Source: Macrostomum lignano (lineage: Eukaryota). From it: 64,000 nucleotides of DNA. Every line of letters starts with the position of its first letter. Position 1 is the stretch's first letter. Where the stretch lies: the NCBI GenBank assembly GCA_002269645.1, contig NIVC01000390.1, positions 62,001 through 126,000 of the forward strand, read 5' to 3'. Position numbers and translations under genes: made by a program. This document shows positions 8,005-47,166 of the stretch, piece after piece. Below the pieces are notes generated by a model. The model worked only from the letters and a program-made list of their open reading frames with translations, searched no databases and had not been told where the DNA came from.

Positions 8005-8665
<661 letters not shown>

Positions 8666-12272: not shown

Positions 12273-12334
12273 ACCTCTCGTCACCCCAGCCTCTCCAATG
12301 ACCCGAAGTCGCGTGCCACCACCAAGTTGCTCAC

Positions 12335-16059: not shown

Positions 16060-16082
16060 GTTGGTGCCGCTTGTGCTATGCC

Positions 16083-17000
16083 TTAGATAGGCCATAGATT
16101 GGCCAAAGATAGGCCATAGATAGGCCATAGCTAGATGCCATAGCCAGGCCATAGCTAGATGCCATAGACAGGTTATAGCTACATGTAGATTCCATAGATA
16201 GGCCATAGCTAGACGTCATAGCTAAATTTCATAGATAGGCCATAGCTACATTCCATAGATAGGCCATAGCTAGATTTCATAGATAGGCCATAGCTATATT
16301 TCATAGATAGGCCATAGCTACATTCCATAGATAGGCCATAGCTAGACGTCATAGATAGGCTATAGCTAAATTTCATAGATAGGCCATAGCTAAATTTCAT
16401 AGATAGGCCATAGCTACATTCCATAGATAGGCCATAGCTAGACGTCATAGATAGGCCATAGCTAGATGTCATAGATAAGCCATAGCTACATTCCAAAGAT
16501 AGGCCATAGCTAGATGTCATAGATAGACAATAGCCACATGTCATAAATAGGCCATAGCTAGATGCCATAGATAGGCCATAGCTAGACGTCATAGATAGGC
16601 CATAGCTACATGCCATAAATAGGCCATAGCTAGATGCTATAGCTAGATGCCAAACGGCCATAGCTAGACGTCATAGATAGGCCATAGCTACATGCCATAA
16701 ATAGGTCATAGCTAGATGCTATAGCTAGATGCCAAACGGCCATAGCTAGATGTCATAGATAGGCCATAGCTAAATTTCATAGATAGGCCATAGCTACATT
16801 CCATAGATAGGCCATAGCTAGACGTCATAGATAGGCCATAGCTAGATGCCATAGATTGGTCATTGCTAGATGTCATAGATAGGCCATAGCTACATTCCAT
16901 AGATAGGCCATAGCTAGACGTCATAGATAGGCCATAGCTAGATGTCATAGATAAGCCATAGCTACATTCCAAAGATAGGCCATAGCTAGATGTCATAGCT
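16083..17000. repeat. 24-bp minisatellite (ataggccatagctagacgtcatag)
   Basis: NmrA-like gene, intron 1. Confidence 0.95.
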
Positions 17001-17556
17001 ATGGTCTTAGATGCCACGGATAGGCCTTGTTATTGTTACCACTCAGCATGGATAGAGTTAGCAGCTCTTGGTTGATCTCTGCCTCAAGGCGGGGCCCAAC
17101 ACGGCAGCAGCTACCAGTATATTTACCATAGACATCGCATCGGCATTCTAGTATGCAGAATATGCATATACATGCAACAGGCCTAAGGTATACTACAGAT
17201 GAGTCAATCCGATCCAACAGCCTGTACTAGCTGTATTTCAGTGAATTTTGCTGTTTTTTTTAATTTAGCTACGTGATCGAAATCTCATTTCCTAAATGCT
17301 TCAAGAAGAAATTGACTTTTGAATTATTTAACCAATTAGTTGAATATCCGCGTATTATTCTATCATTCGTTTTCTGATAGTTACTTTCCCGTTGACTTTT
17401 TAAAATAATTTCCAGAAAAGGATTCGCTGGTTGGTTTTCTGGTAAAATTTCAAAAAGTTTCCGGTTTTTTTTGAAGTTTCAATTCAACTTAAAAGAAATG
17501 ATTTTCTAATAACTATTAATTAACTTCAAATTAATTGTCTGATAACTTTTGCGCAG

Positions 17557-17747
17557 CAATTCCCTGCGGCGGCGAGCCAATCGACATGATGGACGCGGAC
17601 GATATTGCCGAGATTGTGCTTAACTGTCTGCAGCTTGGCAACGGTTGCTATGGACGCTGCCTGCCCCTATCGGCCGGCAAGATTACTGTACAGCAGCTGG
17701 TGGAAATTCTCAGCCGAGAGTTGGGCGTTCACGTCATCGATCAGAAG
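17557..17747 (+). CDS. NmrA-like protein, exon 2
   Basis: GCAG acceptor; phase 1 joins to form GCA. IPCGGEPIDMMDADDIAEIV...ITVQQLVEILSRELG is typical of the NmrA family. GTGATG donor at 17748, phase 0. Confidence 0.8.
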
Positions 17748-17954
17748 GTGATGCCGGAAGATCTGTCTTTTAATTTGCTTGAAAGAAATCATTAATCTGA
17801 TAAGTGAGATAGCGGGGCAGGTTTTGAAAGCTGGCTGCGGGTGGCAGAGCGTGGCAATTATTGCTATTCCCCAGTCGCTAGGTATCAAGTCCAGACTGTT
17901 CTTTCTTTTCGAGTGAATCTGGTTTTATTATCATGTTAAATGATTTTTTACCCA

Positions 17955-20404: not shown

Positions 20405-21210
20405 ATGCAGAGACACAGTCAAGAAGATGCAGAGACACAAGTGATTAGATGCAGAGACACAGGTGATGAGATGCAGAGACACAGGTGATGAGATGTAGAG
20501 ACACAGATGATGAGATGCAGAGACACAGGTGATGAGATGCAGACACACAGGGGATGAGGTGCAGACACACAGGTGATGAGATGCAGAGACACAGGTGATG
20601 AGATGCAGACACACAGGTGATGAGATGCAGACACACAGGTGATGAGGTGCAGAGACACAGGTGATGAGGTGCAGACACACAGGTGATGAGATGCAGAGAC
20701 ACAGGTGATGAGATGCAGAGACACAGGTGATGAGATACAGAGACACAGGTGATGAGATGCAGACACACAGGTGATGAGATGCAGAGACACAGGTGATGAG
20801 ATGTAGACACACAGGTGATGAGATGCAGACACACAGGTGATGAGGTGCAGAGACACAGGTGATGAGATGCAGACACACAGGTGATGAGGTGCAGAGACAC
20901 AGGTGATGAGGTGCAGACACACAGGTGATGAGATGCAGAGACACAGGTGATGAGATGCAGAGACACAGGTGATGAGATACAGAGACACAGGTGATGAGAT
21001 GCAGACACACAGGTGATGAGATGCAGACACACAGGTGATGAGATGCAGAGACACAGGTGATGAGATGCAGAGACACAGGTGATGAGATGCAGACACACAG
21101 GTGATGAGATGCAGACACACAGTGATGAGATGCAGACACACAGTGATGAGATGCAGACACACAGGTGATGAGATGCAGACACACAGGTGATGAGATGCAA
21201 AGACACAGGT
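20405..21210. repeat. 22-bp minisatellite (gagatgcagagacacaggtgat)
   Basis: Direct inspection. Confidence 0.95.
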
Positions 21211-21304
21211 GAGGCGACTACAAGAGTGATAAGTGAAGCTTTAGCACCTGCTAAACTAATATGTGAGTTACATAAAATGCCATCAATAAAAACAAATCCG
21301 GCAG

Positions 21305-21505
21305 ATCACGTGCGAGCAGCTGCGCTCCCGGGGCGATGCAGCTTCAATTGACCTCGGCAACGCCTTCGAGTTTGTGCTGCGAGTCGACCAGCAGCTCAAG
21401 CGCTCGGTGGCTGAGCGCTACCTCGAGCCGCGTCGGCCCGTCGACTTTGCCGACTGGTGCGCCAGGAACCGCGAACAGCTTCTGGCTGCCCTTGAGCGAC
21501 CGTGA
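21305..21505 (+). CDS. NmrA-like protein, exon 3 (absent from ORF track)
   Basis: GGCAG acceptor, phase 0. ITCEQLRSRGDAASIDLGNAFEFVLRVD...DFADWCARNREQL...TGA resembles the NMRAL1 C-terminus (..DLANMFRFY....LDQWLEQHK). Confidence 0.8.
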   Translation: MTCEQLRSRGDAASIDLGNAFEFVLRVDQQLKRSVAERYLEPRRPVDFADWCARNREQLLAALERP

Positions 21506-24581: not shown

Positions 24582-24868
24582 ATGCCTCTAACAAACAATA
24601 CTAGCTCAGTAGTCATTGCTGAAAGCAGCAACTGGAAGCATTACGCCTTAGCCGGCTGGTGCAGTGCAGTGTTCTTAGCCAGCTTCATCTCGAACGGGCT
24701 AGCCGCCTACAACATCCTGGCCTCGCCATCCTTGCGCAATCCGTCAATGCACGTGCTGTGCTCCGGCTTCGTTGGCAACTGTCTGTGCGTGCTGTCGGCC
24801 GCCTCGCTTAACTTGGCGTCGGCTTGGCTGGCCGGAGAGTGGGCCTTCCACATGGCCTGGTGCTACTG
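24582..24868 (+). CDS. Opsin, exon 1 (TM1-TM2, start of TM3)
   Basis: ATG with N-glycosylation sequon NNT. N1.50 (SNGL), SLRNPS loop, GEWAF..WC (Cys110). GTGAGA donor, phase 2. Confidence 0.85.
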
Positions 24869-25759
24869 GTGAGACTGGGCTGCTCAGGGGGAGGAGGGAC
24901 TTCAGGCGGTTTCTATTAATCCAGGTTGTTGTGTACTATAGAACAGAGCGGATCTGGTAGCATTAACATTAGCGGTCAACCTCTACTTAACTGTCTTGCA
25001 GCAGCGCTGTTGATATCCACTGGATTAGTTGAAAAAAATCTGCATTAAAGATGTCGGAATCCAACGCAATTGTGAGACCCCCTGCTGAAAAAATGACATA
25101 AAGTCAAAATCTGCAACTCTGAACTAAAAGCACTCGGTTTTGCTTCATAATCATACGAGTATATGGAACATTTCAAGCCGCCTGTCACGCAGTTTGAGTC
25201 GGTTTGGCTTCTGGAATATTAGGGGGGGGGGAGGCAGGCAGAAAAAGCGGGAATCAATTTCGGCTCTAGTGGAATATACTTCAATAAAAACTGCCGTCTC
25301 CGCCTCGATCTCCAGCAAGCCGAGAGGAGCCGATCAGCTCTAGGTAGAGAGAGATATTTGCGGAGGCTGCAAGCCCTACACCAGCCATATTGGTTAGCGG
25401 GCTTGTGGTTGAGTGCGTCTAGAAAGCTTCTTCAAGCCAGCGTAGTTGCCGCAAAGTCCAACTAACATTTGGCAAAGCATAATTTATTTGATTGAAGACG
25501 TCGGTCGAGTCTGGACTTAAGTAGACAGCGAGCCAATGATAGAGCACTCGACGAATTAGGCAACTTCAATCAACTGTCAAAGATTTTCGGTTTTGCAACA
25601 AGTTAAGCGTATTGTGTAGCGTTAGAGGAAGCTAAATTCAGTTGATGCTACAAGCTGGTTTACTGACAGACGGCAAGATTTATTCGCTAAAGCATTTGAT
25701 CAACTGTAGCGATAGACATCGGACCCGATAAACATCAAAACAGTCTGCCGGCTTGGGTA

Positions 25760-25760
<1 letters not shown>

Positions 25761-25810
<50 letters not shown>

Positions 25811-26638
25811 TACACACAACAAGATGAAAAATAGGAAATAAAGAACAAACGTACAGAATCAAAGAGAGTCAGAGAGAATTGGAGAGAGTAAAAAATTGGA
25901 GAGAGTCAGAGAGAATCGGAGAGAGTCAGAGAGAATCAGAGAGAGTCAGAAAATCGGAGAGAGTCAGAGAGAATCGGAGAGAGTCAGAGAGAATCAGAGA
26001 GAGTCAGAAAATCGGAGAGAGTCAGAGAGAATCGGAGAGAGTCAGAGAGAATCGGAGAGAGTCAGAGAGAATCGGAGAGAGTCAGAGAGAATCAGAGAGA
26101 GTCAGAAAATCGGAGAGAGTCAGAGAGAATCGGAGAGAGTCAGAGAGAATCGGAGAGAGTCAGAGAGAATCGGAGAGAGTCAGAGAGAATCGGAGAGAGT
26201 CAGAGAGAATCGGAGAGAGTCAGAGAGAATCAGAGAGTCAGAGAGAATCGGAGAGAGTCAGAGAGAATCAGAGAGAGTCAGAAAATCGGAGAGAGTCAGA
26301 GAGAATCGGAGAGAGTCAGAGAGAATCGGAGAGAGTCAGAGAGAATCGGAGAGAGTCAGAGAGAATCGGAGAGAGTCAGAGAGAATCAGAGAGTCAGAGA
26401 GAATCGGAGAGAGTCAGAGAGAATCGGAGAGAGTCAGAGAGAATCGGAGAGAGTCAGAGAGAATCAGAGAGTCAGAGAGAATCGGAGAGAGTCAGAGAGA
26501 ATCGGAGAGAGTCAGAGAGAATCGGAGAGAGTCAGAGAGAATCGGAGAGAGTCAGAGAGAATCGGAGAGTCAGAGAGAATCGGAGAGAGTCAGAGAGAAT
26601 CGGAGAGAGTCAGTAAGAATCGGAGAGAGTCAGAGAAT
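25761..26638. repeat. (CT)n-(CA)n, linker and 20-bp minisatellite (gagagtcagagagaatcgga)
   Basis: Same composite as 28606-29027; opsin intron 1. Confidence 0.95.
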
Positions 26639-26697
26639 CCAAAGAAACGAAAGACGAAAACTTTGTCAAACTTTTGCCGCCCGAAAAATCCAAAAAG

Positions 26698-27034
26698 GTA
26701 CGTGTTCAGCACCAGCTCCCTGGGCCTGTTCAACATCAACTTGCTGACCGGCCTGTCAGCCCTGCGCTGCCGCATGGTGACCCGCAACAAGCCGTTCGGC
26801 AGAGCGCAAGTCCTGGTCCTCGTCTGTCTCTCCGCCGTGGTTGCCGCAGCCTGGAGCCTCCCGCCGATGTTCGACGTCGCCGGAGTCCGCCGAGTCGGTC
26901 ACGTGGCCGCCTGCGATCTGGACTGGGAGGGCAACCGGACCCGCGACAAAGTCTACCTGGGCGGCCTGTTGACTGCCGAGTTTTTGCTGCCCCTGGCTGT
27001 CATTGTCGGCTCCTATGTGGCCATCTTTGCGCAC
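26698..27034 (+). CDS. Opsin, exon 2 (TM3-TM5)
   Basis: In frame after phase 2. YVFSTSSLGLFNINLLTGLSALRC, WSLPPMF, ACDLDW (Cys187) and FLLPLAVIVGSY. GTGAGC donor, phase 0. The acceptor is purine-rich (aaaaag). Confidence 0.85.
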
Positions 27035-27057
27035 GTGAGCTGCCGGTGTAGCGTGTC

Positions 27058-28170
27058 CGCTGAGGCAGAGGGGTGGGGTGCTGAGGCAGAAGGATGGGTG
27101 CTGAGGCAGAGGGGTGGGTGCTGAGGCAGAGGGGTGTGTCTGCTGAGGCAGAGGGGTGGGGTGCTGAGGCAGAGGGGTGGGGTGCTGAGGCAGAGGGGTG
27201 GAGTGCTGAGGCAGAGGGGTGGGGTGCTGAGGCAGAGGGGTGGAGTGCTGAGGCAGAGGGGTGGGTGCTGAGGCAGAGGGATGGGTGCTGAGGCAGAGGG
27301 ATGGGTGCTGAGGCAGAGGGGTGGGGTGCTAAGGCAGAGGGTGGGTGCTGAGGCAGAGGGGTGGGTGCTGAGGCAGAGGGTGGAGTGCTGAGGCAGAGGG
27401 GTGGGTGCTGAGGCAGAGGGTGGAGTGCTGAGGCAGAGGGGTGGGGTGCTGAGGCAGAGGGGTGGGTGCTGAGGCAGAGGGGTGGGTGCTGAGGCAGAGG
27501 GTGGAGTGCTGAGGCAGAGGGGTGGGGTGCTGAGGCAGAGGGGTGGGTGCTGAGGCAGAGGGGTGGGTGCTGAGGCAGAGGGGTGGGTGCTGAGGCAGAG
27601 GGGTGTGTCTGCTGAGGCAGAGGGGTGTGTCTGCTGAGGCAGAGGGGTGTGTCTGCTGAGGCAGAGGGGTGTGTCTGCTGAGGCAGAGGGGTGGGGTGCT
27701 GAGGCAGAGGGGTGGGGTGCTGAGGTGGAGGGTGGAGTGCTGAGGCAGAAGGGTGTGTCTGCTGAGGCAGAGGGGTGGGGTGCTGAGGCAGAGGGGTGGA
27801 GTGCTGAGGCAGAGGGGTGGGGTGCTGAGGCAGAGGGGTGGAGTGCTGAGGCAGAGGGGTGGGTGCTGAGGCAGAGGGATGGGTGCTGAGGCAGAGGGAT
27901 GGGTGCTGAGGCAGAGGGGTGGGGTGCTAAGGCAGAGGGGTGGGTGCTGAGGCAGAGGGGTGGGTGCTGAGGCAGAGGGTGGAGTGCTGAGGCAGAGGGG
28001 TGTGTCTGCTGAGGCAGAGGGGTGTGTCTGCTGAGGCAGAGGGGTGTGTCTGCTGAGGCAGAGGGGTGGGGTGCTGAGGCAGAGGGGTGGGGTGCTGAGG
28101 TGGAGTGCTGAGGCAGAAGGGTGTGTCTGCTGAGGCAGAAGGGTGGTGCTGAGACAGAGGGAGTGGGGTG
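27058..28170. repeat. 20/21-bp G-rich minisatellite (gctgaggcagaggggtgggt)
   Basis: Opsin intron 2, starting about 25 bp after the donor. Confidence 0.95.
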
Positions 28171-28229
28171 CTTGGGCTTTGCGAGGGATCAGAAATCGCA
28201 GAAATTTTCGCATCAGAACGGAAATTCAA

Positions 28230-28490
28230 GGTTGATAGTCACCTATTGCCACGTGTTGAAGGTCCAGAAGCTCCGCCTGGGTGAAGGCCAGTGACCAATG
28301 AAGACACAGCTGATGCAGACAGATGCGGTCGATGTGCTGATGAAATTTGGAGGCTTGGCAAGGCTGCACTGAGGTGCAGTGCTGATTGGCGCACAGGGGT
28401 GTACTGAATACACTAGCGCTTATGGGAAAGATCCGACCTTCTAGCAGAATCGTCGAATATCTCGACGGTCTGGAGGACTGGCAACTTGAT
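28230..28490 (-). mobile_element. Dispersed repeat, copy 1 (possible LINE 3' end)
   Basis: About 250 bp similar to 36765-37010. Minus strand reads ..RRDIRRFC*KVGSFP* followed by UTR-like sequence. Confidence 0.4.
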
Positions 28491-28601
28491 TCTTATTTGA
28501 GGAGTTGCGCAATAAAAAGTTAGCCCGTGTACTTGAAATTCGCGTTGCTCAGTTCCGGCGCAGCAAAAAAAAATTGTCTGGTCCCCCCCACGGTAGTTCT
28601 A

Positions 28602-28605
<4 letters not shown>

Positions 28606-28652
<47 letters not shown>

Positions 28653-29027
28653 ACGCACACACACACATACACACAACAAGAAACAAGATCAAAATAGGAA
28701 ATAAAGAAAAAACGTACAGGGTTAAAGAGAGTCAGAGAGAATCGGAGAGAGTCAGAGAGAATCGGAGAGAGTCAGAGAGAATCGGAGAGTCAGAGAGAAT
28801 CGGAGAGAGTCAGAGAGAATCGGAGAGAGTCAGAGAGAATCGGAGAGAGTCAGGGAGAATCGGAGAGTCAGAGAGAATCGGAGAGAGTCAGAGAGAATTG
28901 GAGAGTCAGGGAGAATCGGAGAGAGTCAGAGAGAATCGGAGAGAGTCAGAGAGAATCGGAGAGAGTCAGAGAGAATCGGAGAGAGTCAGAGAGAATCGGA
29001 GAGAGTCAGAGAGAATCGGAGAAATAT
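28606..29027 (-). mobile_element. TSD-flanked composite insertion: (CT)n-(CA)n, unique linker, 20-bp minisatellite
   Basis: Perfect 14-bp direct repeat ggtagttctactgt at 28592-28605 and 29028-29041. A second copy of the composite lies at about 25761-26638. Confidence 0.65.
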
Positions 29028-30257
29028 GGTAGTTCTACTGTTAATCCGCATATAGGCCGGCAGCCAGCTTGTTGTCAGGGCTGGCCTTTTTTAAAATGCA
29101 ATTTCAGACAATAAAAAGCAAGCCGGATTAGGCAAGGCTAGAAAGAGAGACAGGATCGGTTTAAATTAAGCGCTGAAGTGAGGCCCGGAATTTCCCTTTC
29201 ATCCTCATTCAGCTGTAGACAGACAGGCTGGATGCAGTGCGAGTGGGACAAGCAACGATTAGAAATCATTGCCTCTTAGTCCAGCTTTTTTAATAAAAAA
29301 CTGTCTGGACCGCAGCAAATACTGAATAAAATCTGCAACTGGCAGCTGGGAATGGGAAGAGAATTTCATTTTCAGAAGTCATGTATTATTAGCTGCAAGT
29401 CATGCGCAAAGTTTGCTTAAAAAACTGTGAGGACCCTGATAGGAACACTGCTCTCAGTTTCTGCTCCTCGCTACGGTTGCACCTGCAGAAGCCCTCATAT
29501 AAGTCCTTCCAACCTTACTCATCTATCCTCGTATTTTTATTGGGTTGAGTTCTATTTTCTATCACATCGTGCATGGAATACTAAACCTAGGACTTACATC
29601 CGGATTGGAAACTGTTTGTTGATTTATTCAAATTTTCTGGCCACCTCCTGATTTTTTGAGTGAAAGAAAGTCAATTAATCCTTACTGGGTGCAAAAAGAT
29701 AAACTTTACTGCAGTTTCCAGTCCAGATTCTATGCGTAGAATAAGTGCATGGATTGCGCTGCAGTTTCCAGTCCAGATACTACACGCAGCATAGACGAAT
29801 AGTCCATGGTTTTGTAGACGATGAACAGTTTCCAAATCCAAAGCCTGTTAATTTGTCGCAAGCCTGGCAAACAGATCAAGGTCTCCAATCATATGGGCTT
29901 CCGTGTGTGAAATTGATCTTGTTTTCCCACTGTTTTCTGTCCATCTTTTGCCTAATTAGCTATGAGCATGAGCAGTCCTTCAGTCATTAGTTTCGAGCAG
30001 ATGGGGCTCATAGAGTTGGCAAACCGGACTGAAGCCTCAGCCATCATCATTAGTTATTCTTAATGAACTTTAGGAGAGAATTTATAATACAAGCTAGGAA
30101 AAATAACTGAGAATCAGGAATAATGACTCAAAATGGTAAATGATCATTGAGAATCACAGATACTCACTGTGAATTATTGGTAATCTATGGGAATAATATA
30201 CTAACATTAATGATCATCAAGAGTGATTGAAAACCTTGAGTGATGATTAATCCAAGA

Positions 30258-31942
30258 TCATTAGGAGTCACTGAGAATCATTGAGGATCATTAGAGGAGT
30301 CACTGAGAATCATTGAGGATCATTAGAGGAGTCACTGGGAATCATTGAGGATCATTAGAGGAGTCACTGAGAATCATTGAGGATCATTAGAGGAGTCACT
30401 GAGAATCATTGAGGATCATTAGAGGAGTCACTGAGAATCATTGAGGATCATTAGAGGAGTCACTGAGAATCATTGAGGATCATTAGAGGAGTCACTGGGA
30501 ATCATTGAGGATCATTAGAGGAGTCACTGGGAATCATTGAGGATCATTAGAGGAGTCACTGAGAATCATTGAGGATCATTAGAGGAGTCACTGAGAATCA
30601 TTGAGGATCATTAGAGGAGTCACTGGGAATCATTGAGGATCATTAGAGGAGTCACTGAGAATCATTGAGGATCATTAGAGGAGTCACTGGGAATCATTGA
30701 GGATCATTAGAGGAGTCACTGAGAATCATTGAGGATCATTAGAGGAGTCACTAAGAATCATTGCGGATCATTAGGAATCACTGAGAATCATTGCGGATCA
30801 TTACCGGTAGGAGTCACTGAGAATCATTGCGGATCATTAGGAGTCACTGAGAATCATTGCGGATCATTAGGAATCACTGAGAATCACTGAGGATCATTAA
30901 CCGTAGGAGTCACTGAGAATCATTGAGGATCATTAGAGGAGTCACTGGGAATCATTGAGGATCATTAGAGGAGTCACTGAGAATCATTGAGGATCATTAG
31001 AGGAGTCACTGAGAATCATTGAGGATCATTAGAGGAGTCACTGAGAATCATTGAGGATCATTAGAGGAGTCACTGAGAATCATTGAGGATCATTAGAGGA
31101 GTCACTGGGAATCATTGAGGATCATTAGAGGAGTCACTGGGAATCATTGAGGATCATTAGAGGAGTCACTGAGAATCATTGAGGATCATTAGAGGAGTCA
31201 CTGAGAATCATTGAGGATCATTAGAGGAGTCACTGGGAATCATTGAGGATCATTAGAGGAGTCACTGAGAATCATTGAGGATCATTAGAGGAGTCACTGG
31301 GAATCATTGAGGATCATTAGAGGAGTCACTGAGAATCATTGAGGATCATTAGAGGAGTCACTAAGAATCATTGCGGATCATTAGGAATCACTGAGAATCA
31401 TTGCGGATCATTACCGGTAGGAGTCACTGAGAATCATTGCGGATCATTAGGAGTCACTGAGAATCATTGCGGATCATTAGGAATCACTGAGAATCACTGA
31501 GGATCATTAACCGTAGGAGTCACTGAGAATCATTGAGGATCATTAGGAGTCACTGAGAATCATTGCGGATCATTAGGAGTCACTGAGAATCATTGAGGAT
31601 CATTACCCGTAGGAGTCACTGAGAATCATTGAGGATCATTACCCGTAGGAGTCACTGAGAATCATTGAGGATCATTACCCGTAGGAGTCACTGAGAATCA
31701 TTGAGGATCATTACCCGTAGGAGTCACTGAGAATCATTGAGGATCATTACCCGTAGGAGTCACTGAGAATCATTGAGGAGCATTACCCGTAGGAGTCACT
31801 GAGAATCATTGAGGAGCATTACCCGTAGGAGTCACTAAGAATCATTGCGGATCATTAACCGTAGGAGTCACTGAGAATCATTGAGGATCATTAGGAGTCA
31901 CTGAGAATCATTGAGGATCATTACCCGTAGGAGTCACTGAGA
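30258..31942. repeat. 32-bp minisatellite with a ~610-bp higher-order duplication
   Basis: Unit aggagtcactgagaatcattgaggatcattag. A diagnostic variant block recurs at 30751 and 31361. Confidence 0.95.
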
Positions 31943-31986
31943 GTGAGGATCACAGAATCAAACCGTCGCCGCTCCCTCCCCCGCAG

Positions 31987-32080
31987 ATCCGCAGACACCG
32001 CAGCTCAATCGTGTCAACCTCCAGCGGCAATCAGGCCAGGCGTGATCGCCAGTTCGTCATTCACGTGCTGGCCATCATCG
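31987..32080 (+). CDS. Opsin, exon 3 (ICL3 and start of TM6; absent from ORF track)
   Basis: cccgcag acceptor, phase 0. IRRHRSSIVSTSSGNQARRDRQFVIHVLAII. GTGAGC donor in phase 1 matches exon 4. Confidence 0.8.
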
Positions 32081-32479
32081 GTGAGCTGGTTTTGTAAATT
32101 GGTCGCCTCTCACGGGATCAGAGACAAAGTATTTGGGACAGCAATTATTTCCTTATAAACGCTTACAAACATCGGAAGTGGGAGATTCTCATTAGAGCTT
32201 GTGGGGGCTGAGTCGAGCAGATCCCCTAATCTGAATGGAGACATCCGAGTCACGAATCGGATTGGCAAACTGAAGGTGTGCCGTCCACATCGAGAGTCGC
32301 TTAATGAGCACCGACTTCAAAAGATAATTGCAGCTTGTTTTTTCAGTTGAAAAAAACTCGTGAATCACTTTAACATGAGCTTGTAAGCCCTTGCTTCATC
32401 AAAATGGCCCGAGCTCCCGTTTCTATGCAGAAGCTGGCTTGAGGCGTCCATTCTCGGGCCCTAAGAACCCATGCTCCAT

Positions 32480-33175
32480 CTTTCTGTACAGCCTTAGGAC
32501 CTAGACCATAGAAACCCAGCTCCGTCTCTCTGTACAGCTTTAGGACTTAGACCATAGAACTCCAGCTCCGTCTTTTTGTACATGTACATCCCAGGACTTA
32601 GACCATAAAACCCCAGTTCCGTCTCTCTGTACACACCAGGACTTAGACCATAGAACCCCAACCTCTGTCTCTCTGTACATACCAGGACTTAGACCATAGA
32701 ACTCCACCTCTGTCTCTCTGTACATACCAGGACTTAGACCATAGAACCCCACCTCTGTCTCTCTGTACACACCAGGACTTAGACCATAGAACCCCACCTC
32801 TGTCTCTCTGTACATACCAGGACTTAGACCATAGAACCCCAACCTCTGTCTCTCTGTACATACCAGGACTTAGACCATAGAACCCCACCTCTGTCTCTCT
32901 GTACACACCAGGACTTAGACCATAGAACCCCACCTCTGTCTCTCTGTACACACCAGGACTTAGACCATAGAACCCCACCTCTGTCTCTCTGTACATACCA
33001 GGACTTAGACCATAGAACCCCACCTCTGTCTCTCTGTACATACCAGGACTTAGACCATAGAACCCCACCTCTGTCTCTCTGTACATACCAGGACTTAGAC
33101 CATAGAACCCCACCTCTGTCTCTCTGTACATACCAGGACTTAGACCATAGAACTCCACCTCTGTCTCTCTGTACC
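32480..33175. repeat. 45-bp minisatellite
   Basis: ccaggacttagaccatagaaccccacctctgtctctctgtacata. Confidence 0.95.
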
Positions 33176-33944
33176 GCCCACTCTGCGACCGGCACTCCGC
33201 CTCCATCCCGCAATCGATCTGCCTGTATTTGAGCTTCAGGCAAAGGAAACTAAATTGGGTTTCCCAATTGATTGCACAGATAAAGCAGCTACCACTTAAA
33301 TCAAACAGCGTGACGCTTTTAAGCGATACTTTTCAATTAAAAAAAATTAAAATCGACGTTTTAAATAAAATAACTGCGAAAAGCGAAGCTTTCTGAGGAA
33401 GATCTATCGACTGATTCGCCGTAACGAGTTTTAAAAATAAAATTAGCAAATTCCGCGTCGAATTAAATGGATTGAATTTTAATTTCATTTTTACGTCTGT
33501 AAATAGGACAGATAACTCAATGGCACACTGAATAGAAAACATGGTTCTAGTGGATCATTTTTGACAACTCGAATCTCCCTTTTCGCTGAAAGATGCAGAA
33601 TATACAGTATATAGATAGACATGAAAAATTGAAAGCCTATGTACTCGTGCAATAAACACAGGTTGGGCCATAAGACAACACACAATTCCCTGACAGACAA
33701 GACAAGAAAGCCTAGAATTTGACACTTAAACTTGCAATTTAAGGCCACAAAGTTTTGTCAAAGGCTGAGAGCCTGCATAATTCCAAGAAAGCGACTTTGC
33801 ATGGTTATAGTGAGCCTTCAGTTAAGTGCAGCGACAGACCATGGAATTAGCAGTAGAAGTGTTCAGTGATCGCTTGTCAGACTCGCCACTTGTTACCGGT
33901 AAGCCTATCAAGTGGAGAGCCCCCACTAGCTGTAGCAGCAGCCA

Positions 33945-34190
33945 CTGCCACAGAACTGCACTCGGCCATAGACAATAAAGCCGATCAAGGCCACTGCCAC
34001 AGAACTGCACTCGGCCATAGACAATAAAGCCAATACGCACTCGGCCATAGACAATAAAGCCAATACGCACTTGGCCATAGACAATAAAGCCGATCAAAGC
34101 CACTGCCACAGAACTGCACTCGGCCATAGACAGTAAAGCCAATCAAAGCCACTGCCACAGAACTGCACTCGGCCATAGACAATAAAGCCG
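33945..34190. repeat. Irregular tandem repeat (gcactcggccatagacaataaagcc core)
   Basis: Direct inspection. Confidence 0.85.
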
Positions 34191-36764
34191 ACAGGGCTCC
34201 GACAGGCTGTGGAGAAGACAAAAGTCGAAAAAGTGGCTCAAATTAGCAATCAATGGTATTCTTTCTGCCAAAGTTAGCCTACGTCAAGGAGTTCTATAAT
34301 TAGCATCTGGAATGGAAACGAGTTTTTCAATTTAGGCTCCTTGTAATATAGACAACCCAACAAAAGAATTTCAGAACAGAAATGATTTGTCCTTTGGTGT
34401 TGCGACTCCTTTGAATTTGTTCGGACATTTGAAATCGGTGCAAATCAGTCCTTCTCTTAAGCCGCTCAGAATGAAAAAAATGCGTTAAAACCACAGAGTC
34501 ATGGTCATTCAATGCTGGGCCTCATTTCGTAAATTCTTTTTGTTTTCATTTTCTCTTTCCACCCCAGATGCTTATTATAGAAAAATATTTGATCTACGTG
34601 AGTTCTTTTCATTGAAGTTTAGTAATTGACATTCAATATTAGGCAAGTTCAGATTATTTAATAATGCCAAGGAGAACTTTAATTAAAATTCTGGAATCTG
34701 AAATTGTCATTAGGACCAGTCCACGTCTCCTTGGCCTTATCCATAAAGCGTGAATCAAGCCATCCGAATAACTATGCAAGAGATGCGAAGAAATTTAATC
34801 TTCTTAGAGTGTGGAAGAAAGTTTATTAGCTAACCCCCTTCCCAGAAAGAAAGTCAATTACTGCGGGGTCAGGTTGCCAGGGGCAGGCCCGAACTCAGTG
34901 CTTGCCGCTACGGCGTTGACTGTGGCGGATGCGCGCATAGGAAGCGTCGGTCCCCGGACTCAAACAGCTTCAGCAGCTCTGCTTTAGCTAGACTTTTCAA
35001 GATACTTAGAAAATATTTGAAGGCCGGCTTCCAATATAATAAATGCTACAGAGATTTTAAGACAAGTTCATAGAGTGAAGGCATGATTATTCATTTGGTT
35101 CCCGCGTCTGTTTCCTTCTAATTATTGGTGACCATGTGGTTAAACAAAATATTTGCACAACATTGAGTCATCTAGGATAAACTGCTTACTATGAAGGCTC
35201 TGGAGAATTAGCAAATCAATAAAATTGGAAAGTGCCTCTATCCGCAGGCATCGTTATTTTTGCGTGTAGAGACAAGCTTTCAAAGATTTCACCCTCAAAG
35301 ATTCTCTAAGAAAGGAAGTCCCCCGTCCTACGAGAACTCGAGAGACGTCTTTGCCGGGACGGACTCAAGCTCCAGAAGTGCCTTTGCTCAGCTAGGGGAT
35401 GCACTCGTGCGTTGCTTCCTCTGTTCTCATTATGCTTTCTGTATTTCTGTGATCCTGGAGCCGAGAAACAAAGTAGATATTTCCATGCAGACTTTACTCT
35501 GACGAGCCAAGCACAGACTAGAAAAGCTGCCTTATCTAACGCCACAAAACTCCTTTGTTAAGCAGAGTTAGGGTTCAGACTTTTTCAATAAGCTCTGAGA
35601 CCAACCGCCCACAGCCTCCTTTGCGAACTGACTGGCTAACCAACCTGCTCTTGCACACTTCTGTAAGTCATCATGCCATTGTTTAGGATGGACTGGTAAC
35701 TCCGTACATTTATCCCTACCCCTGCCCTTCATGGCATCAAGCTTGCAGCTCTTGATTCAACCTTCACTCCGACAGTTGACTCATGCGAGTACAAAACATC
35801 CGGTAATTGCGGTAATTGCAATTTTACCACCCATTTTGATCACGGTTTGCTGGGAAATGCACTATAATTTGCTTTGGTAGTGAGCCCTGCAGCAGAGCAG
35901 GGAATTCCTTGCTAAGATAGCCACCTGATAGCGCCACGCTGCTGAGGTGGAGAGATCCGATAATCCAGTTTTCTTGAAGGCCGAACTCTCGCTCATCAAC
36001 AGCAGCTGGTGACATTATCAGGTCTAATAAGCAGGTGGAAGCAACCCGAGCTTGAGCAAGGCAATGCAGTATGCGCCTGATTGCAAAAGTTTTTCTTGTT
36101 AGCCGCATCTGCTTCAACTCGCAGTCCCCAGTCATTATTTGCGCTATCCGAAATTTAATTCCAAGCCTGAAAAGATTCGAGAATTTTTTTCCCAGAATAA
36201 GAAAACAAGGCAGAGGAGTAGGACTCAGTCTAGACTGCGAGAAACTTCTGTCGGCGGAGAAGGTTTCAGTTATCAATTTTTTAATCACGATCATTGCTGC
36301 GGGCACGATAAAAAATCCGATTGACGCAAATGAAACACGAACTGAAGCCCCCAAATCCCCGGTTTACATGGCCTGAGCCGGAACCAGCAACCTGTGTAGC
36401 CTAAATTAACGTAATTGACTTTCTCAATTCGCACGAACCAGGCGGGAAGTAAAATTTGATCAGATTTTTTTGAAATAAAAAATGGAAATTTTCCCAACTA
36501 GAAGATTAAAATCTAAGGAAACAGGGCCGCCCGCAGACAGAAGGTGATTCAAAAGTAGAACTACCCAGGAGGAATTCTGCCGGACAACTTTTTGTTGCGC
36601 ACCCTCTCAAACAAAAATCTTGAGTTAAGTTCCACTTGCGCAACAATTTTAACGTGTAAAAATCTCGTTTGGGCGTCCATAGTCCCAGTTGAGGTTGGCC
36701 CACTGTCAAGGCTTGATCAGCGAAACTAGAGTCCTATTTTCTAGTTTCGGTTGGAGCGTCCATG

Positions 36765-37010
36765 ACTCCATAGTCACCTATTGCCACATCTTGAAGGTCC
36801 AGAAGCTCCGCCCGGGTGAAGACCAGGGACCAATGAAGCCAGAGCTGATGCAGACAGATGCGGTCGACGTGCTGATGAAATTTGGAGGCTTGGCAAGGCT
36901 GCACTGAGGCGCAGTGCTGAGTGGCACACAGGGGTGTACTGAATACACTAGCGCTTATGGGATAAATCCGACCTTCTGGCAGAATCGTCGAATATCTTTG
37001 AAGGTTCGAA
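36765..37010 (-). mobile_element. Dispersed repeat, copy 2 (possible LINE 3' end)
   Basis: Homologous to 28230-28490. Minus strand reads ..FKDIRRFCQKVGFIP* followed by the shared tail. Confidence 0.4.
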
Positions 37011-37494
37011 ACAAAAAGAAATTTTTCTTGAAATTCGCAGCAAAAATTTATCAAGGGGAATTTCCGCCTTAGTAGATATTGCTACTGTAAACACCAGCTG
37101 TAGCTTATCAACTTTACCTCCAGTTCCATCGCTCGGGAAAATAAAGTCTCCTATTTTACGGCAAGTTACAGCGCAGAAAAGAACAAAAACCGACGAAGAG
37201 CAAGCAGACGGATTCATCAAGGACTACTTAAGTGGTGCTTTAGTAGAACGACTAGCGGTCCTTGACTGTTACCTGGCCAAGTGCCCATTAGCTTCCTATG
37301 TGCACTGTGCTCTGCAGAGAAAGAGTAGGGGAAGTAACATTAAAAGTACAAACAGTACATTATTCTAGACCAAAACGGACTTTTCAGTGCACGTTCATAT
37401 CCGACTACCAAAAATGCCTACGAAAGCTTCCGATGCACAATGCCCAAAATCTCCCCTAGAACACTTGCTAAATTCCTAAAAATAAGCCCCTTAA

Positions 37495-38012
37495 ATATTC
37501 TTGCTAAAAGCCACCAAAACCCTTGCCAAAAACTCCTAAGAACACTGACTAAAAGCCACCAAAACCCTTGCCAAAAACCCTAAGAGCATTGACTAAAAGC
37601 CACCAAAACCCTTGCCAAAAACCCTAAAAACATTGACTAAAAGAAACCAAAACCCTTGCCAAAAACCCTAAGAGCATTGACTAAAATCCACCAAAACCCT
37701 TGCCAAAAACCCTAAGAACATTGACTAAAAGCCACCAAAACCCTTGCCAAAAACCCTAAGAGCATTGACTAAAAGCCACCAAAACCCTTGCCAAAAACCC
37801 TAAAAACATTGACTAAAAGAAACCAAAACCCTTGCCAAAAACCCTAAGAGCATTGACTAAAATCCACCAAAACCCTTGCCAAAAACCCTAAGAACATTGA
37901 CTAAAAGAAACCAAAACCCTTGCCAAAAACCCTAAGAGCATTGACTAAAATCCACCAAAACCTTGCCAAAAACCCTAAGAACATTGACTAAAAGCCACCA
38001 AAACCCTTGCCA
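37495..38012. repeat. 44-bp minisatellite ending at the opsin exon 4 acceptor
   Basis: ccaaaacccttgccaaaaaccctaagagcattgactaaaagcca. Confidence 0.95.
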
Positions 38013-38013
38013 G

Positions 38014-38411
38014 TGGGCTTCATGGTCTGCTGGACGCCCTACTCAATCCTGGCTGCCTGCAGCCTGCTCAGCCTGCTCCACATTGACAGCGGCCTCTACC
38101 TGGGGCTGTCCACTGCCGCTCTGCTCCTGGCCAAGGCTGGCATGGCCACCTCAGCGCTGGCCTACTTCGCTGTCAACGCCGAATTTCGTTCGGCATTCGC
38201 CTCCACTCCGCTCGGCAAACGACTGGGCTGCGTGCCGGCCAACGCCAACCATGGTGTGTCCATGGCCCAGCAGACCGAGGCTATGGAGCTGCGGCGGGTG
38301 AGAAACCGGAGCGACCAGGACTACAGCAGCAGCAGCGACGAAGACAACGACAAGAAGCCGGCGGACGAGGTGGCTCCCCTGGCCGGAGATGGCGGCAACG
38401 CCACTGCTTAG
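38014..38411 (+). CDS. Opsin, exon 4 (TM6, TM7 with Lys296, helix 8, C-tail)
   Basis: CAG acceptor, phase 1. VGFMVCWTPYS, then LLLAKAGMATSALAY with Lys exactly 10 residues before Tyr306, then NAEFR helix 8. Joined CDS is 1116 nt = 371 aa. Confidence 0.88.
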
Positions 38412-42312: not shown

Positions 42313-42341
42313 CTACGAGCGGAGCAGAAACCAGAGCTCAC

Positions 42342-42570
42342 CTCTGCCGCCGCCCCCGCTGCCGATGCAGCACCTGAAGCACCACCACCGGCACCTGCGG
42401 CAGCAGCAGCAGCAGCCGCAGAAGACGCGCAGGTAGCCTTCCCGGTAACTGTGCGAGCAGACTGCGTAGATAAGCGGATTAAAGACGCCGGATAGAGTTG
42501 TGCTGAGCTGGGCGTACATCACTAGCGGCGGACTCACTGACAGATTTGAGTAGCGAAGTCCAGCGAGTAC
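42342..42570 (-). CDS. Class A GPCR (prostanoid-receptor-like), exon 2: ECL3, TM7, Cys-rich tail
   Basis: AAG acceptor, phase 0. LSTTLSGVFNPLIY (NPxxY), SHSYREGY helix 8, then CGCCCCCRRCRWWCFRCC. GTGAGC donor, phase 1. Confidence 0.85.
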
Positions 42571-43017
42571 CTTGATGGATTGATTGTTAATTTGCATGTC
42601 ATTTGAGTGACAACTTTTTCAGAATCTTCTGTTTTAACTGGGTGAGCTTCTAAATGTGAGAGATTTGAACTCACAATAGGCCAATGCCGGTTTCTGAGTT
42701 CTTACTCATTGTTGACTTGTCTTGACCGTTGAGCCTGGACATTACCTGTGGACACACATACACACACTCACACACACACACACACACACACCCACACACA
42801 CACACACACACGAAGTCCTAGCTAAATTTGCGTAATCCTTGCTCCCTCTTATAGAAGTACATGCATTTTATGGGATTTGCGTCACATAATTTTTTGCCAC
42901 TGGATTATGATTAGGTCTTCTATCTCTAGTGGCAATCCAGTAGCAAGAAAGATCTAAGGTTAAGGTTAGGGTAGAGTTTTTTGTTGTGTCTACTCGGCTT
43001 GCTTATAGCCACAGCAG

Positions 43018-46493: not shown

Positions 46494-47166
46494 GCTATGA
46501 ATTAGTCAGCCGCTCAAACTCAGTAGCTATCAATTAGTCAGTCGCTCAAACTCAGTAGCTATCAATTAGTCAGTCACTCAAACTCAGTAGCTATGAATTA
46601 GTCAGTCACTCAAACTCAGTAGCTATCAATTAGTCAGTTACTCAAACTCAATGGCTATGAATTAGTCAGTCGCTCAAACTCAGTAGCTATGAATTAGTCA
46701 GCCGCTCAAACTCAGTAGCTATGAATTAGTCAGCCGCTCAAACTCAGTAGCTATCAATTAGTCAGTCACTCAAACTCAGTAGCTATCAATTAGTCAGTCA
46801 CTCAAACTCAGTAGCTACCAATTAGTCAGTCACTCAAACTCAGTATCTATTAATTAGTCAGTTACTCAAACTCAATGGCTATGAATTAGTCAGTCGCTCA
46901 AACTCAGTAGCTATTGTGACATAGTGACACGATGAACTTTGCTATAGGTTGCATGCACTGTAGTGTTGACTCACTAGCAGTGGAGTTGTTATTGATCGGC
47001 TTAGAGATTGTATTTTATTCCACCCACCCCATGCGCGCGTTTGAATCTGTCTGCACCCACCACCTCAGTGCTAAATAATAAATGTTAACAGCCTAGCTCT
47101 CAAGCGAGCACCTTTTACTCACTCCTGCAATTCCACACTTCTGCCTCGCTTAACAAAGTTATCACA

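What the first reader, a model, noticed from the sequence alone, without database searches (positions are those of the whole stretch)
24582..38411. Intact Lys296 opsin with no acidic residue at the canonical counterion sites, but an unusual Asp188
Seen: four phase-compatible exons give a 371-aa 7TM protein with C110/C187, G121, R135, W265-x-P267-Y268, K296, Y306 and N310xxF313R. Using bovine numbering by ungapped hand alignment, position 113 is Tyr and ECL2 PPMFDVAGVRRVGHVAAC aligns to PPLFGWSRYVPEGLxTSC, giving Val181. Positions 94 (Asn) and 292 (Leu) are also neutral, while 188 is Asp. Established: animal opsins normally stabilise the protonated Schiff base with E113 or E181 (E94 in a box-jellyfish opsin), and residue 188 lies next to the retinal. 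Inference: this is a UV pigment with an unprotonated Schiff base, an anion-dependent pigment, or a pigment with a new counterion site (D188).
Basis: partly seen in the sequence, partly recalled or inferred. Interest (0 to 1): 0.85.

Follow-up and report, generated by a model that had tools for sequence, protein, structure and literature searches.

The report
Flatworm xenopsin-type opsin lacking known counterions
This is a real, evolutionarily maintained four-exon gene for a very divergent light-receptor protein (opsin) of a macrostomid flatworm that keeps the retinal-binding lysine but has no acidic residue at any site known to stabilise the chromophore in other animal opsins, so it must handle its chromophore in an unusual and still untested way.

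Summary
Exons 24582-24868, 26698-27034, 31987-32080 and 38014-38411 (+ strand, all GT-AG, phases 2/0/1) give a 371-aa 7TM protein with C110/C187, R135, W265-x-P-Y, K296 and Y306. A 150-sequence alignment, HMMER pairwise alignments and an AlphaFold model all place Asn83, Asn94, Tyr113, Val181 and Leu292 at the known counterion sites, and Asp at 188.

A full-length homolog rebuilt from Macrostomum lignano has the same three introns, is 63% identical and shows dN/dS of about 0.3. It keeps every one of these residues, so this is not a pseudogene or a splicing artefact.

New here:
- Two of the three introns (229|230 phase 0; codon 259 phase 1) are exactly the two xenopsin-specific introns, found also in a Mytilus xenopsin and a Brachionus opsin. 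C-opsins and other opsins tested lack them. The gene is best read as a highly derived xenopsin.
- It has also lost Asp83, Glu134, Tyr136, Trp161, Tyr178 and the Asn-Pro of NPxxY. It has gained a conserved Arg179-Arg180-x-x-His183 cluster and Glu211.

Which photochemistry follows cannot be decided by sequence. The options are an Asp188 counterion, an unprotonated UV pigment, a chloride counterion, or a non-signalling photoisomerase. I favour Asp188 at about 0.35.

The parts
24582..24868 (+). Exon 1: start codon, glycosylatable N-terminus, TM1, TM2 (Asn83 at 24777-24779, Asn94 at 24810-24812), ECL1, Cys110 (24861-24863). It ends inside codon 112 (phase 2).
   Evidence: It is 73% identical in protein to L001 8426-8662.
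24869..26697 (+). Intron 1 (gtgaga..aaaaag), mostly a 20-bp minisatellite at 25855-26636. This intron position was not seen in the other opsins tested.
26698..27034 (+). Exon 2: Tyr113 (26699-26701), TM3 with Leu134-Arg135-Cys136 (26762-26770), and TM4. ECL2 hairpin with Val178-Arg179-Arg180-Val181 (26885-26896), His183, Cys187 (26912-26914), Asp188 (26915-26917), Asp190 and Glu192. TM5 with Glu211 (26978-26980), Pro215 and Tyr223. It ends after His229 (phase 0).
   Evidence: It is 68% identical to L001 9926-10267.
27035..31986 (+). Intron 2, at 229|230 phase 0, which is the first xenopsin-type intron position. It is filled with minisatellites (27059-28172, 28726-29022, 30256-31942).
31987..32080 (+). 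Exon 3: ICL3 and the cytoplasmic half of TM6 (IRRHRSS..ARRDRQFVIHVLAII), with Asp247 at 32044-32046. It ends after the first base of codon 259 (phase 1).
   Evidence: It is 71% identical to L001 15504-15596. The exon 2-3 junction is present in UniRef A0A1I8H915 and PAA90994.1.
32081..38013 (+). Intron 3, in codon 259 phase 1, which is the second xenopsin-type intron position. It contains minisatellites 32496-33174, 33940-34191 and 37504-38012; the last of these abuts the acceptor.
38014..38411 (+). Exon 4: TM6 with Cys264-Trp265-Thr-Pro267-Tyr268, ECL3, and TM7 with Leu292 (38121-38123), Lys296 (38133-38135), Ser302-Ala303 (38151-38156) and Tyr306. Then helix 8 (Asn310-Ala-Glu-Phe313-Arg314), a Cys for palmitoylation, an acidic Ser-rich tail, and the TAG stop.
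   Evidence: It matches L001 21013-21363.

Best explanation
The locus encodes a functional, selectively maintained opsin of a macrostomid flatworm. Its only close relative in public data is a Macrostomum lignano gene. By gene structure it descends from the xenopsin lineage, but it is the most derived Lys296-bearing opsin in the comparison set.

Shown:
- The four-exon model, the opsin fold and Lys296.
- The absence of Asp/Glu at 83, 94, 113, 181 and 292.
- The conserved Asp188, Arg179, Arg180, His183 and Glu211.
- Purifying selection.
- The xenopsin-type introns.

Inferred mechanism. The protein still binds retinal through Lys296. The counterion role that Glu181 (strand beta3 of ECL2) plays in xenopsins and other Tyr113 opsins has moved to Asp188 on the neighbouring strand beta4. 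Asp188 is next to the Cys187 backbone, which lies close to the Schiff base. It probably acts through water and is modulated by the facing Arg179.

The loss of Asp83, Glu134 and Asn302-Pro303 implies altered or weak G-protein activation.

Confidence is about 0.9 that this is a genuine maintained opsin gene lacking all known counterion sites, about 0.65 that it is xenopsin-derived, and about 0.35 that Asp188 is the counterion. The figure given for this explanation as a whole is the last one.
For: Gene and selection.

Opsin identity:
- Pfam 7tm_1, 1.3e-10.
- The best solved-structure sequence matches are visual opsins.
- 845 library hits; of the 147 aligned, 127 of the 141 with a residue at position 296 have Lys.
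- AlphaFold pLDDT 87.5, pTM 0.83.
- Foldseek top hits are squid, jumping-spider and bovine rhodopsins.

Residue assignments.

Pocket constraint: 22 of 23 pocket residues are identical between the two flatworm proteins.

Xenopsin link:
- Introns at 229|230 phase 0 and codon 259 phase 1 are identical to those of the Mytilus xenopsin and the Brachionus opsin.
- They are absent from two c-opsins, a nemertean opsin, a Daphnia opsin-5 and an intronless Asterias opsin.
- The literature states that all xenopsins share two introns, the first lying near but not at the second c-opsin intron (PMC5648526; PMC10512536).

Asp188 as candidate:
- It is the only conserved acidic side chain on the strand that lines the polyene.
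- It is rare among relatives (2 of 147).
- The Cys187 backbone is close enough to the Schiff base to coordinate the chloride counterion in the ASO-II model (PMC12401545).
- Counterion relocation is tolerated in rhodopsin mutants, for example E113Q/A292E cited in that paper.
Against: - No spectroscopy, no expression data, and no coordinates were available to measure the Asp188-Schiff base distance.
- Arg179 is the cross-strand neighbour of 188 in the predicted hairpin and could neutralise it.
- The two relatives that have Asp188 keep Glu181, so Asp188 need not be a counterion.
- Loss of six activation microswitch residues fits a non-signalling protein.
- Sequence similarity does not favour xenopsins: group HMMs score c-opsin 135-141 bits against xenopsin 103-123 bits.
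- A distance tree was uninformative.
- The 310-312 tripeptide is NAE/NSE, not the xenopsin NxQ.
Confidence: 0.35

Rival explanations
1. [quoted passage not shown] No counterion is needed in the dark. Asp188 either stabilises the protonated photoproduct or only forms a structural salt bridge with Arg179.
For: All five described counterion sites are neutral. Basic residues Arg179, Arg180 and His183 near the pocket would lower the Schiff-base pKa. Removing Glu181 from Tyr113-type opsins is known to abolish visible absorbance (established knowledge: Terakita et al. 2004).
Against: Asp188 is conserved and lies on the retinal-lining strand. The sequence gives no positive marker for UV tuning.
Confidence: 0.25
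2. Non-signalling retinal protein: a photoisomerase or retinal store analogous to RGR/retinochrome, or to the role proposed for flatworm xenopsin clade B. It keeps the pocket and Lys296 but has given up G-protein activation.
For: Asp83, Glu134, Tyr136, Trp161, Asn302 and Pro303 are all replaced and conserved as such. This is the highest microswitch loss among 130 Lys296 sequences. The NxQ tripeptide is absent. Rawlinson et al. suggested that xenopsins lacking NxQ may be photoisomerases (PMC6805122). Human RGR likewise lacks Glu134 and Pro303 (from memory, not tested here).
Against: Arg135, Tyr223, Asp247 (at Glu247), Tyr306 and helix 8 with Phe313-Arg314 are kept. These are the parts that contact G protein or arrestin. 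Known photoisomerases keep Glu181.
Confidence: 0.17
3. Anion-dependent pigment. A chloride ion held by the Arg179/Arg180/His183 cluster and the Cys187 backbone serves as counterion, as in coral ASO-II opsins or E113Q rhodopsin.
For: There is precedent in ASO-II opsins, where Cl- near the Cys187 backbone is the dark-state counterion (PMC12401545). A new, conserved basic cluster sits in ECL2. In LWS cone opsins the chloride site is His181/Lys184 in the same loop (established knowledge).
Against: The Glu/Asp292 that assists chloride binding in ASO-II is Leu here. Asp188 next to the putative site would repel an anion.
Confidence: 0.12
4. Former opsin that no longer binds retinal: an orphan class-A receptor for another ligand, or a light-independent function, with Lys296 retained for other reasons.
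For: It is extremely divergent (19-25% identity to other opsins in the 150-sequence alignment, 21-34% over matched stretches). NPY2 receptor scores almost as well as opsins among solved structures (6e-11 against 3.6e-13). The NJ tree pulls it towards non-opsin GPCRs. A conserved Glu at 5.46 (position 211) is reminiscent of ligand-binding sites.
Against: Lys296, Ala295, Trp265, Tyr268, Phe261, Gly121, the ECL2 plug and 22 of 23 pocket residues are conserved. It has xenopsin introns. Foldseek ranks opsins first. The NJ placement is a typical long-branch artefact.
Confidence: 0.08
5. Pseudogene or gene-prediction artefact.
For: Exon 1 acceptor context is weak (aaaaag). The introns are full of repeats. 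The window protein itself is not in the protein collections.
Against: The ORF is intact in two lineages, with identical canonical splice sites. dN/dS is about 0.3 and GC3 is 80% in both.
Confidence: 0.02

Closest known systems
Xenopsins (spiralian opsins; e.g. Maritigrella crozieri xenopsin, Terebratalia 'ciliary opsin', Mytilus/Crassostrea xenopsins)
   Same: - Spiralian host.
- Lys296, Tyr113 and the Cys110/Cys187 pair.
- Both xenopsin-specific introns at identical position and phase: 229|230 phase 0 and codon 259 phase 1. Even the Ile-Arg that follows the first intron is shared.
   Different: - Only 19-22% identity in the alignment.
- Glu181 is replaced by Val.
- NxQ is replaced by NAE/NSE.
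- Asp83, Glu134 and Asn-Pro of NPxxY are lost.
- There is an extra intron in codon 112.
- Previous surveys reported no xenopsin in macrostomids (PMC6805122).
Macrostomum lignano BOX15_Mlig015728g1 (PAA90994.1; UniRef A0A1I8H915, A0A1I8J5A0), annotated only as a GPCR family 1 domain protein
   Same: It is an ortholog or old paralog. It is 63% identical, with the same introns and the same unusual residues at every site discussed.
   Different: The public model is truncated at the N-terminus: it lacks exon 1 and 25 codons of exon 2. It has never been described as an opsin in the papers searched. It comes from a different species or an old duplicate, because only the exons align at DNA level.
Anthozoan-specific opsins II (ASO-II, e.g. 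Acropora tenuis Antho2a)
   Same: These are opsins with Lys296 but no Glu94, Glu113 or Glu181. They show that an opsin can work with a non-canonical (chloride) counterion.
   Different: ASO-II opsins have a conserved Glu/Asp292 and c-opsin-type introns and are cnidarian. This protein has Leu292 and xenopsin-type introns and is bilaterian.
RGR / retinochrome photoisomerases
   Same: Retinal-binding opsins with degenerate activation motifs. RGR has Gly134 and Asn-Ala at NPxxY (from memory).
   Different: They keep Glu181 and belong to the tetraopsins. No relationship was tested or suggested by gene structure.
Brachionus plicatilis opsin RNA28085.1 (labelled 'melanopsin')
   Same: It shares the two xenopsin introns, Asn83, loss of Trp161 and loss of Asn-Pro in NPxxY (SSGIY).
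   Different: It keeps Glu181 and Glu134, has NKQ at 310-312 and Ser188, and carries four further introns.

Membership tests
Animal (type II) opsin | Class-A seven-helix GPCR fold | tested here: met
   Pfam 7tm_1 1.3e-10. AlphaFold pTM 0.83 with seven helices plus helix 8. Foldseek top hits are rhodopsins.
Animal (type II) opsin | Lysine at position 296 in helix 7 | tested here: met
   AAG at 38133-38135 aligns with Lys296 in the pairwise and 150-sequence alignments. It is conserved in M. lignano.
Animal (type II) opsin | Cys110-Cys187 pair and an ECL2 beta-hairpin plug | tested here: met
   Both cysteines are present. The predicted strands are at 178-181 and 186-189.
Animal (type II) opsin | Acidic counterion at 113 or 181 (or the lineage-specific 94, 292, 83) | tested here: not met
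   The residues are Tyr113, Val181, Asn94, Leu292 and Asn83, in both flatworm proteins.
Animal (type II) opsin | Binds retinal and responds to light | not testable with these tools
   This needs heterologous expression and spectroscopy.
Xenopsin | Two conserved intron positions with conserved phase | tested here: met
   229|230 phase 0 and codon 259 phase 1 occur in the window gene, in M. lignano, in the Mytilus xenopsin and in the Brachionus opsin. They are absent in the five other opsin genes mapped.
Xenopsin | Falls inside the xenopsin clade in a phylogeny | tested here: inconclusive
   The NJ tree shows a long-branch artefact. Group HMM scores do not favour xenopsins. No ML or Bayesian software was available.
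Xenopsin | NxQ tripeptide at 310-312 (clade A xenopsins) | tested here: not met
   The tripeptide is NAE in the window protein and NSE in M. lignano. Flatworm clade B xenopsins also lack NxQ (PMC6805122).
Xenopsin | Spiralian distribution | tested here: met
   The only close relative is from the flatworm Macrostomum lignano.
Ciliary opsin (c-opsin) | Three conserved introns (codon 121, 232|233, 312|313) | tested here: not met
   These positions were verified in Ptychodera and amphioxus c-opsins. None is present in the window gene.
ASO-II chloride-counterion opsins | Conserved Glu/Asp292 one turn from Lys296 | tested here: not met
   Position 292 is Leu in both flatworm proteins. The ASO-II hits P0037 and P0040 show Glu292 in the same alignment.
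RGR/retinochrome photoisomerases | Tetraopsin ancestry, Glu181, all-trans to 11-cis photoisomerase activity | not tested
   The only link is a resemblance in lost activation motifs, recalled from memory. Glu181 is absent here.

The most novel reading that the evidence does not exclude
A bilaterian opsin in which the Schiff-base counterion has moved to a site never described before: Asp188 on strand beta4 of extracellular loop 2. This would be a further independent counterion relocation after Glu181, Glu113, Glu94 and the Cl-/Glu292 system. It would occur in a cryptic xenopsin lineage of macrostomid flatworms that earlier surveys missed.
Probability: 0.3. Interest if true: 0.8.

Novelty: new variant of a known kind. 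Interest (0 to 1): 0.62.

Why it matters
The counterion is the central device that lets animal opsins see visible light. Only a handful of solutions are known: Glu181, Glu113, Glu94, and Cl- with Glu292. Each new one has changed how opsin evolution and spectral tuning are understood, and some have given optogenetic tools.

This gene is a naturally occurring, selectively maintained Lys296 opsin with none of those sites. It comes from a laboratory-tractable animal group: Macrostomum lignano has transgenesis and RNAi. The question of how such a pigment holds its proton, or whether it needs to, is therefore directly testable with a few mutants.

It also extends xenopsins to macrostomids, where they were reported absent. 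And it shows that intron positions can classify opsins that are too divergent for trees.

Tried and rejected
1. The first word-indexed protein search, with the exon 1+2+4 concatenate, found nothing. The 8000-candidate list was probably swamped by the low-complexity tail. A search with the core alone found only the M. lignano cluster.
2. An alternative exon 3 at about 36193-36259 (tttttttcccag|AAT..GAA G|gtttca, 22 aa) is phase-compatible. An overlapping frame reads a TM6-like ..AEKVSVINFLITIIAAG. I rejected both: the first gives a charged, shortened TM6, the second has no usable donor, and neither is conserved in M. lignano. Exon 31987-32080 is conserved.
3. A neighbour-joining tree of 132 sequences grouped the flatworm pair with Lys296-less GPCRs. 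This is a long-branch artefact and was not used.
4. Small group HMMs (xenopsin against c-opsin) were equivocal and depended on sampling.
5. Look-ups of P0001 and P0176 found no contig. The M. edulis locus of the same gene was used instead.
7. Model coordinates are not returned, so the Asp188-Lys296 distance could not be measured.
8. No synteny with the M. lignano locus was detectable within the flanks held, so orthology against old paralogy, and the species of origin, stay open.
9. P0014 (an r-opsin) came only from an intron-free transcript-like contig and gave no gene-structure information.
Full report
**Is it there?**

Yes. Reading the + strand from the ATG at 24582, I rebuilt the gene independently.
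- Exon 1: 24582-24868.
- Exon 2: 26698-27034.
- Exon 4: 38014-38411.

These were evident from open frames and splice consensus.

Exon 3 was found by scanning every AG..GT interval of the right phase between exons 2 and 4. It is 31987-32080, with an excellent acceptor (ctccctcccccgcag) and a gtgagc donor. It encodes ICL3 and the inner half of TM6.

GC3 is 80% against 47% GC for the window. Adding exon 3 raised the best solved-structure hit from 34 to 52 bits (SWS1 cone opsin 3.6e-13, bovine rhodopsin 2.4e-12).

**Is it a real gene?**

An exhaustive HMMER search of 1.84 billion representatives gave 845 hits. Only one was close: a 134-aa Macrostomum lignano fragment at 66% identity.

Its longer cluster mate is PAA90994.1. 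It led to the M. lignano contig NIVC01000099.1 (locus L001). There tblastn found all four exons.

I assembled a complete 376-aa homolog from exons 8363-8661, 9925-10261, 15504-15597 and 21008-21408. Its intron positions and phases are identical to those of the window gene, and all its splice sites are canonical.
- The two proteins are 63% identical.
- Nei-Gojobori dN/dS is 0.36 overall and 0.27 in the 7TM core, and ML puts dS at saturation.
- Outside the exons the two loci share nothing except one short repeat.

So the gene is under purifying selection in two lineages. It is neither a pseudogene nor a mis-splice. The window comes from a macrostomid flatworm that is either another species or carries an old paralog. 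I could not tell which.

**Are the residue assignments right?**

I aligned the window protein, the M. lignano protein, bovine rhodopsin and 147 of the best hits (alignment A1).

Of the 141 hits with a residue at position 296, 127 have Lys. The neighbourhood is therefore overwhelmingly opsin. Both flatworm proteins have:
- Asn55, Asn83, Asn94, Cys110, Tyr113, Gly121;
- Leu134-Arg135-Cys136, Ala161;
- Val178-Arg179-Arg180-Val181, His183;
- Ala186-Cys187-Asp188-Leu189-Asp190-Trp191-Glu192;
- Glu211, Pro215, Tyr223, Asp247, Phe261, Trp265, Pro267, Tyr268;
- Leu292, Lys296, Ser302-Ala303, Tyr306, Asn310, Phe313-Arg314.

The ECL2 register is ungapped from Pro171 to Cys187. It is the same in the HMMER pairwise alignments. 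It also agrees with the AlphaFold model (pLDDT 87.5, pTM 0.83). In that model the hairpin strands fall at 178-181 and 186-189, with pLDDT above 90.

Among the hits, Glu181 occurs in 124 of 147. Asp188 occurs in only 2, both of which keep Glu181. Only 3 of the 127 Lys296 sequences lack an acid at all of 94, 113, 181 and 292.

1. The protein has also lost Asp83 (2.50), Glu134 and Tyr136 of E/DRY, Trp161 (4.50), Tyr178, and both Asn302 and Pro303 of NPxxY. That is six of thirteen class-A microswitch residues. This is the largest loss among all 130 Lys296 sequences compared, and it is identical in both flatworm proteins.
2. Arg135, Tyr223, an acid at 247, Tyr306 and helix 8 remain.
3. Position 181 is flanked by a new, conserved basic cluster: Arg179, Arg180 and His183. 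In the hairpin register Arg179 is the cross-strand partner of Asp188, just as Arg177 pairs with Asp190 in bovine rhodopsin (the latter from established structural knowledge).
4. A conserved Glu sits at 211 (5.46) near where the ionone ring lies in rhodopsin.
5. 22 of 23 retinal-pocket positions are identical between the two proteins, against 63% overall. This argues that the pocket is still used.

**What kind of opsin is it?**

Sequence similarity is flat. In the 150-sequence alignment the window protein is 19-25% identical to amphioxus and hemichordate c-opsins, echinoderm opsins, the Maritigrella xenopsin and Daphnia opsin-5 (21-34% over the matched stretches). A distance tree suffers long-branch attraction, and small group HMMs are equivocal.

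Gene structure is informative. I mapped introns in seven other opsin genes fetched from public assemblies.

| Gene | Introns (bovine numbering) |
|---|---|
| Window gene and M. lignano homolog | codon 112 phase 2; 229\|230 phase 0; codon 259 phase 1 |
| Mytilus xenopsin (43% identical to the Maritigrella xenopsin) | exactly two: after Thr229 phase 0 (..VFMT\|IRS..), and in codon 259 phase 1 (..MIG\|VFMFAW) |
| Brachionus opsin | the same two plus four others |
| Ptychodera and amphioxus c-opsins | the classical codon 121, 232\|233 and 312\|313 |
| Nemertean opsin | unrelated positions |
| Daphnia opsin-5 | unrelated positions |
| Asterias opsin | intronless |

In the window gene the corresponding junctions read ..IFAH|IRR.. 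and ..AII(V)|GFMVCW.

The literature says the same thing:
- All xenopsins share two introns of conserved phase.
- The first lies close to, but not at, the second c-opsin intron.
- The second is unique to xenopsins (Vöcking et al. 2017, PMC5648526).
- One of these boundaries is shared with anthozoan cnidopsins (PMC10512536).

Two exact matches out of three introns, among roughly a thousand possible position-phase combinations, is very unlikely by chance. I therefore read the gene as a highly derived member of the xenopsin lineage (about 0.65).

Rawlinson et al. 2019 reported no xenopsin-like sequences in macrostomids (PMC6805122). Vöcking et al. list only an r-opsin for M. lignano. The lineage therefore seems to have been overlooked, probably because of its divergence and the truncated public model.

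**How does it work?**

This part is inference. Opsins with Tyr113 normally rely on Glu181, and removing it abolishes visible absorbance (established knowledge). The only described Lys296 opsins without Glu94, Glu113 or Glu181 are the coral ASO-II opsins. These use chloride in the dark state and Glu292 in the photoproduct, and the Cys187 backbone helps to coordinate the ion about 3 Å from the Schiff base (PMC12401545). Here position 292 is Leu.

Four readings remain.

(a) *Asp188 counterion.* Asp188 is adjacent to that same Cys187 backbone, on the strand that lines the polyene. It has taken over from Glu181 as a probably water-mediated counterion. It is the only conserved acid in reach and is otherwise very rare.

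(b) *Unprotonated UV pigment.* The Schiff base is unprotonated in the dark. Asp188 then pairs structurally with Arg179 or serves only the photoproduct.

(c) *Chloride counterion.* The Arg179/Arg180/His183 cluster binds chloride as counterion.

(d) *Non-signalling protein.* The protein is a retinal photoisomerase or store. This fits the wholesale loss of activation motifs and the missing NxQ, as Rawlinson et al. proposed for clade B xenopsins. Option (d) can be combined with any of (a) to (c).

I rank them (a) 0.35, (b) 0.25, (d) 0.17 and (c) 0.12. A non-retinal ex-opsin gets 0.08 and an artefact 0.02. No tool here gives model coordinates or spectra, so the ranking is soft.

**Comparison with what is known, and novelty**

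It is an opsin by fold, Lys296, disulfide and neighbours. It fails the counterion criterion of every described group.
- It meets the xenopsin gene-structure criterion. It does not meet the NxQ criterion, and the tree criterion could not be tested.
- It is not a c-opsin: the introns were tested and the criterion is not met.
- It is not ASO-II: position 292 was tested and the criterion is not met.

I file it as a new variant of a known kind.

It is of real interest to opsin specialists. It comes from a tractable model genus and makes the counterion question testable with a few mutants. It is tempered by the ASO-II precedent and by the real chance that it is simply a UV or non-signalling pigment. 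Interest 0.62.

**Surroundings**

The three introns are packed with minisatellites that create long spurious ORFs. The window also holds:
- an aminergic-like GPCR ORF;
- a prostanoid-receptor-like GPCR ORF;
- a GPCR TM7 fragment;
- an NmrA-like gene;
- a retrotransposon gag-pol fragment.

None is related to the opsin.

Noticed in passing
window 25855-26636, 27059-28172, 28726-29022, 30256-31942, 32496-33174, 33940-34191, 37504-38012: The opsin introns are largely made of minisatellites with 20-, 21-, 32-, 45-, 49- and 44-bp units, in up to about 52 copies. They produce long repetitive pseudo-ORFs on both strands. The same 20-bp unit occurs in introns 1 and 2. The 44-bp array runs right up to the exon 4 acceptor.
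   Followed up: partly
window 28250-28358 and 36785-36893; L001 24489-24598: A roughly 110-bp element occurs twice in the opsin introns. It occurs once downstream of the M. lignano homolog at about 75% identity. It is probably a short interspersed repeat shared among macrostomids.
   Followed up: no
window 12284-13159 (-): A 292-aa open frame encodes TM1-TM5 of a class-A GPCR. Its best matches are histamine H3, muscarinic and serotonin receptors (Pfam 7tm_1 9.6e-23; PDB 3e-15). It is a biogenic-amine-type receptor gene.
   Followed up: partly
window 50151-51002 (-) and 42316-42618 (-): There is another class-A GPCR ORF. Its best solved relatives are prostaglandin EP4/EP3 receptors (3e-8). There is also a separate TM7/NPxxY-containing fragment without Lys296. 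Neither is an opsin.
   Followed up: partly
window 15549-16094 and 17535-17792 (+): Two exons of an NmrA-like / NAD(P)-binding protein gene lie upstream of the opsin (Pfam NAD_binding_10 9e-7; NmrA 1.9e-5).
   Followed up: no
window 47089-49459 (+): A retrotransposon gag-pol fragment with aspartyl protease and integrase core domains (Pfam rve 1.1e-15). A related piece lies in L001 at about 4485-4664.
   Followed up: no
L001 8363-10000 (M. lignano NIVC01000099.1): The deposited M. lignano gene model PAA90994.1 starts at an internal Met in exon 2. It misses exon 1 and 25 codons of exon 2. The complete ORF is 376 aa. UniRef A0A1I8H915 and A0A1I8J5A0 read through the exon 3 donor into the intron.
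   Followed up: yes
L007 about 4985-4995 (Mytilus edulis CAJPWZ010003049.1): The M. edulis xenopsin model (CDS labelled OPN3) skips its 106-nt middle exon. The assembly has a one-base frameshift in an A-run there. The M. galloprovincialis protein shows the exon is real.
   Followed up: partly
L006 (Brachionus plicatilis REGN01002438.1): A rotifer opsin labelled 'melanopsin' carries the two xenopsin introns. Like the flatworm gene it has lost Asp83, Trp161 and the Asn-Pro of NPxxY (SSGIY), but it keeps Glu181. This is possibly parallel degeneration within xenopsins.
   Followed up: partly
window 36193-36300 (+): This is a decoy exon. A strong acceptor (tttttttcccag) is followed by a phase-compatible 67-nt ORF, and an overlapping frame reads a TM6-like peptide. 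It is not conserved in M. lignano and is not part of the gene.
   Followed up: yes
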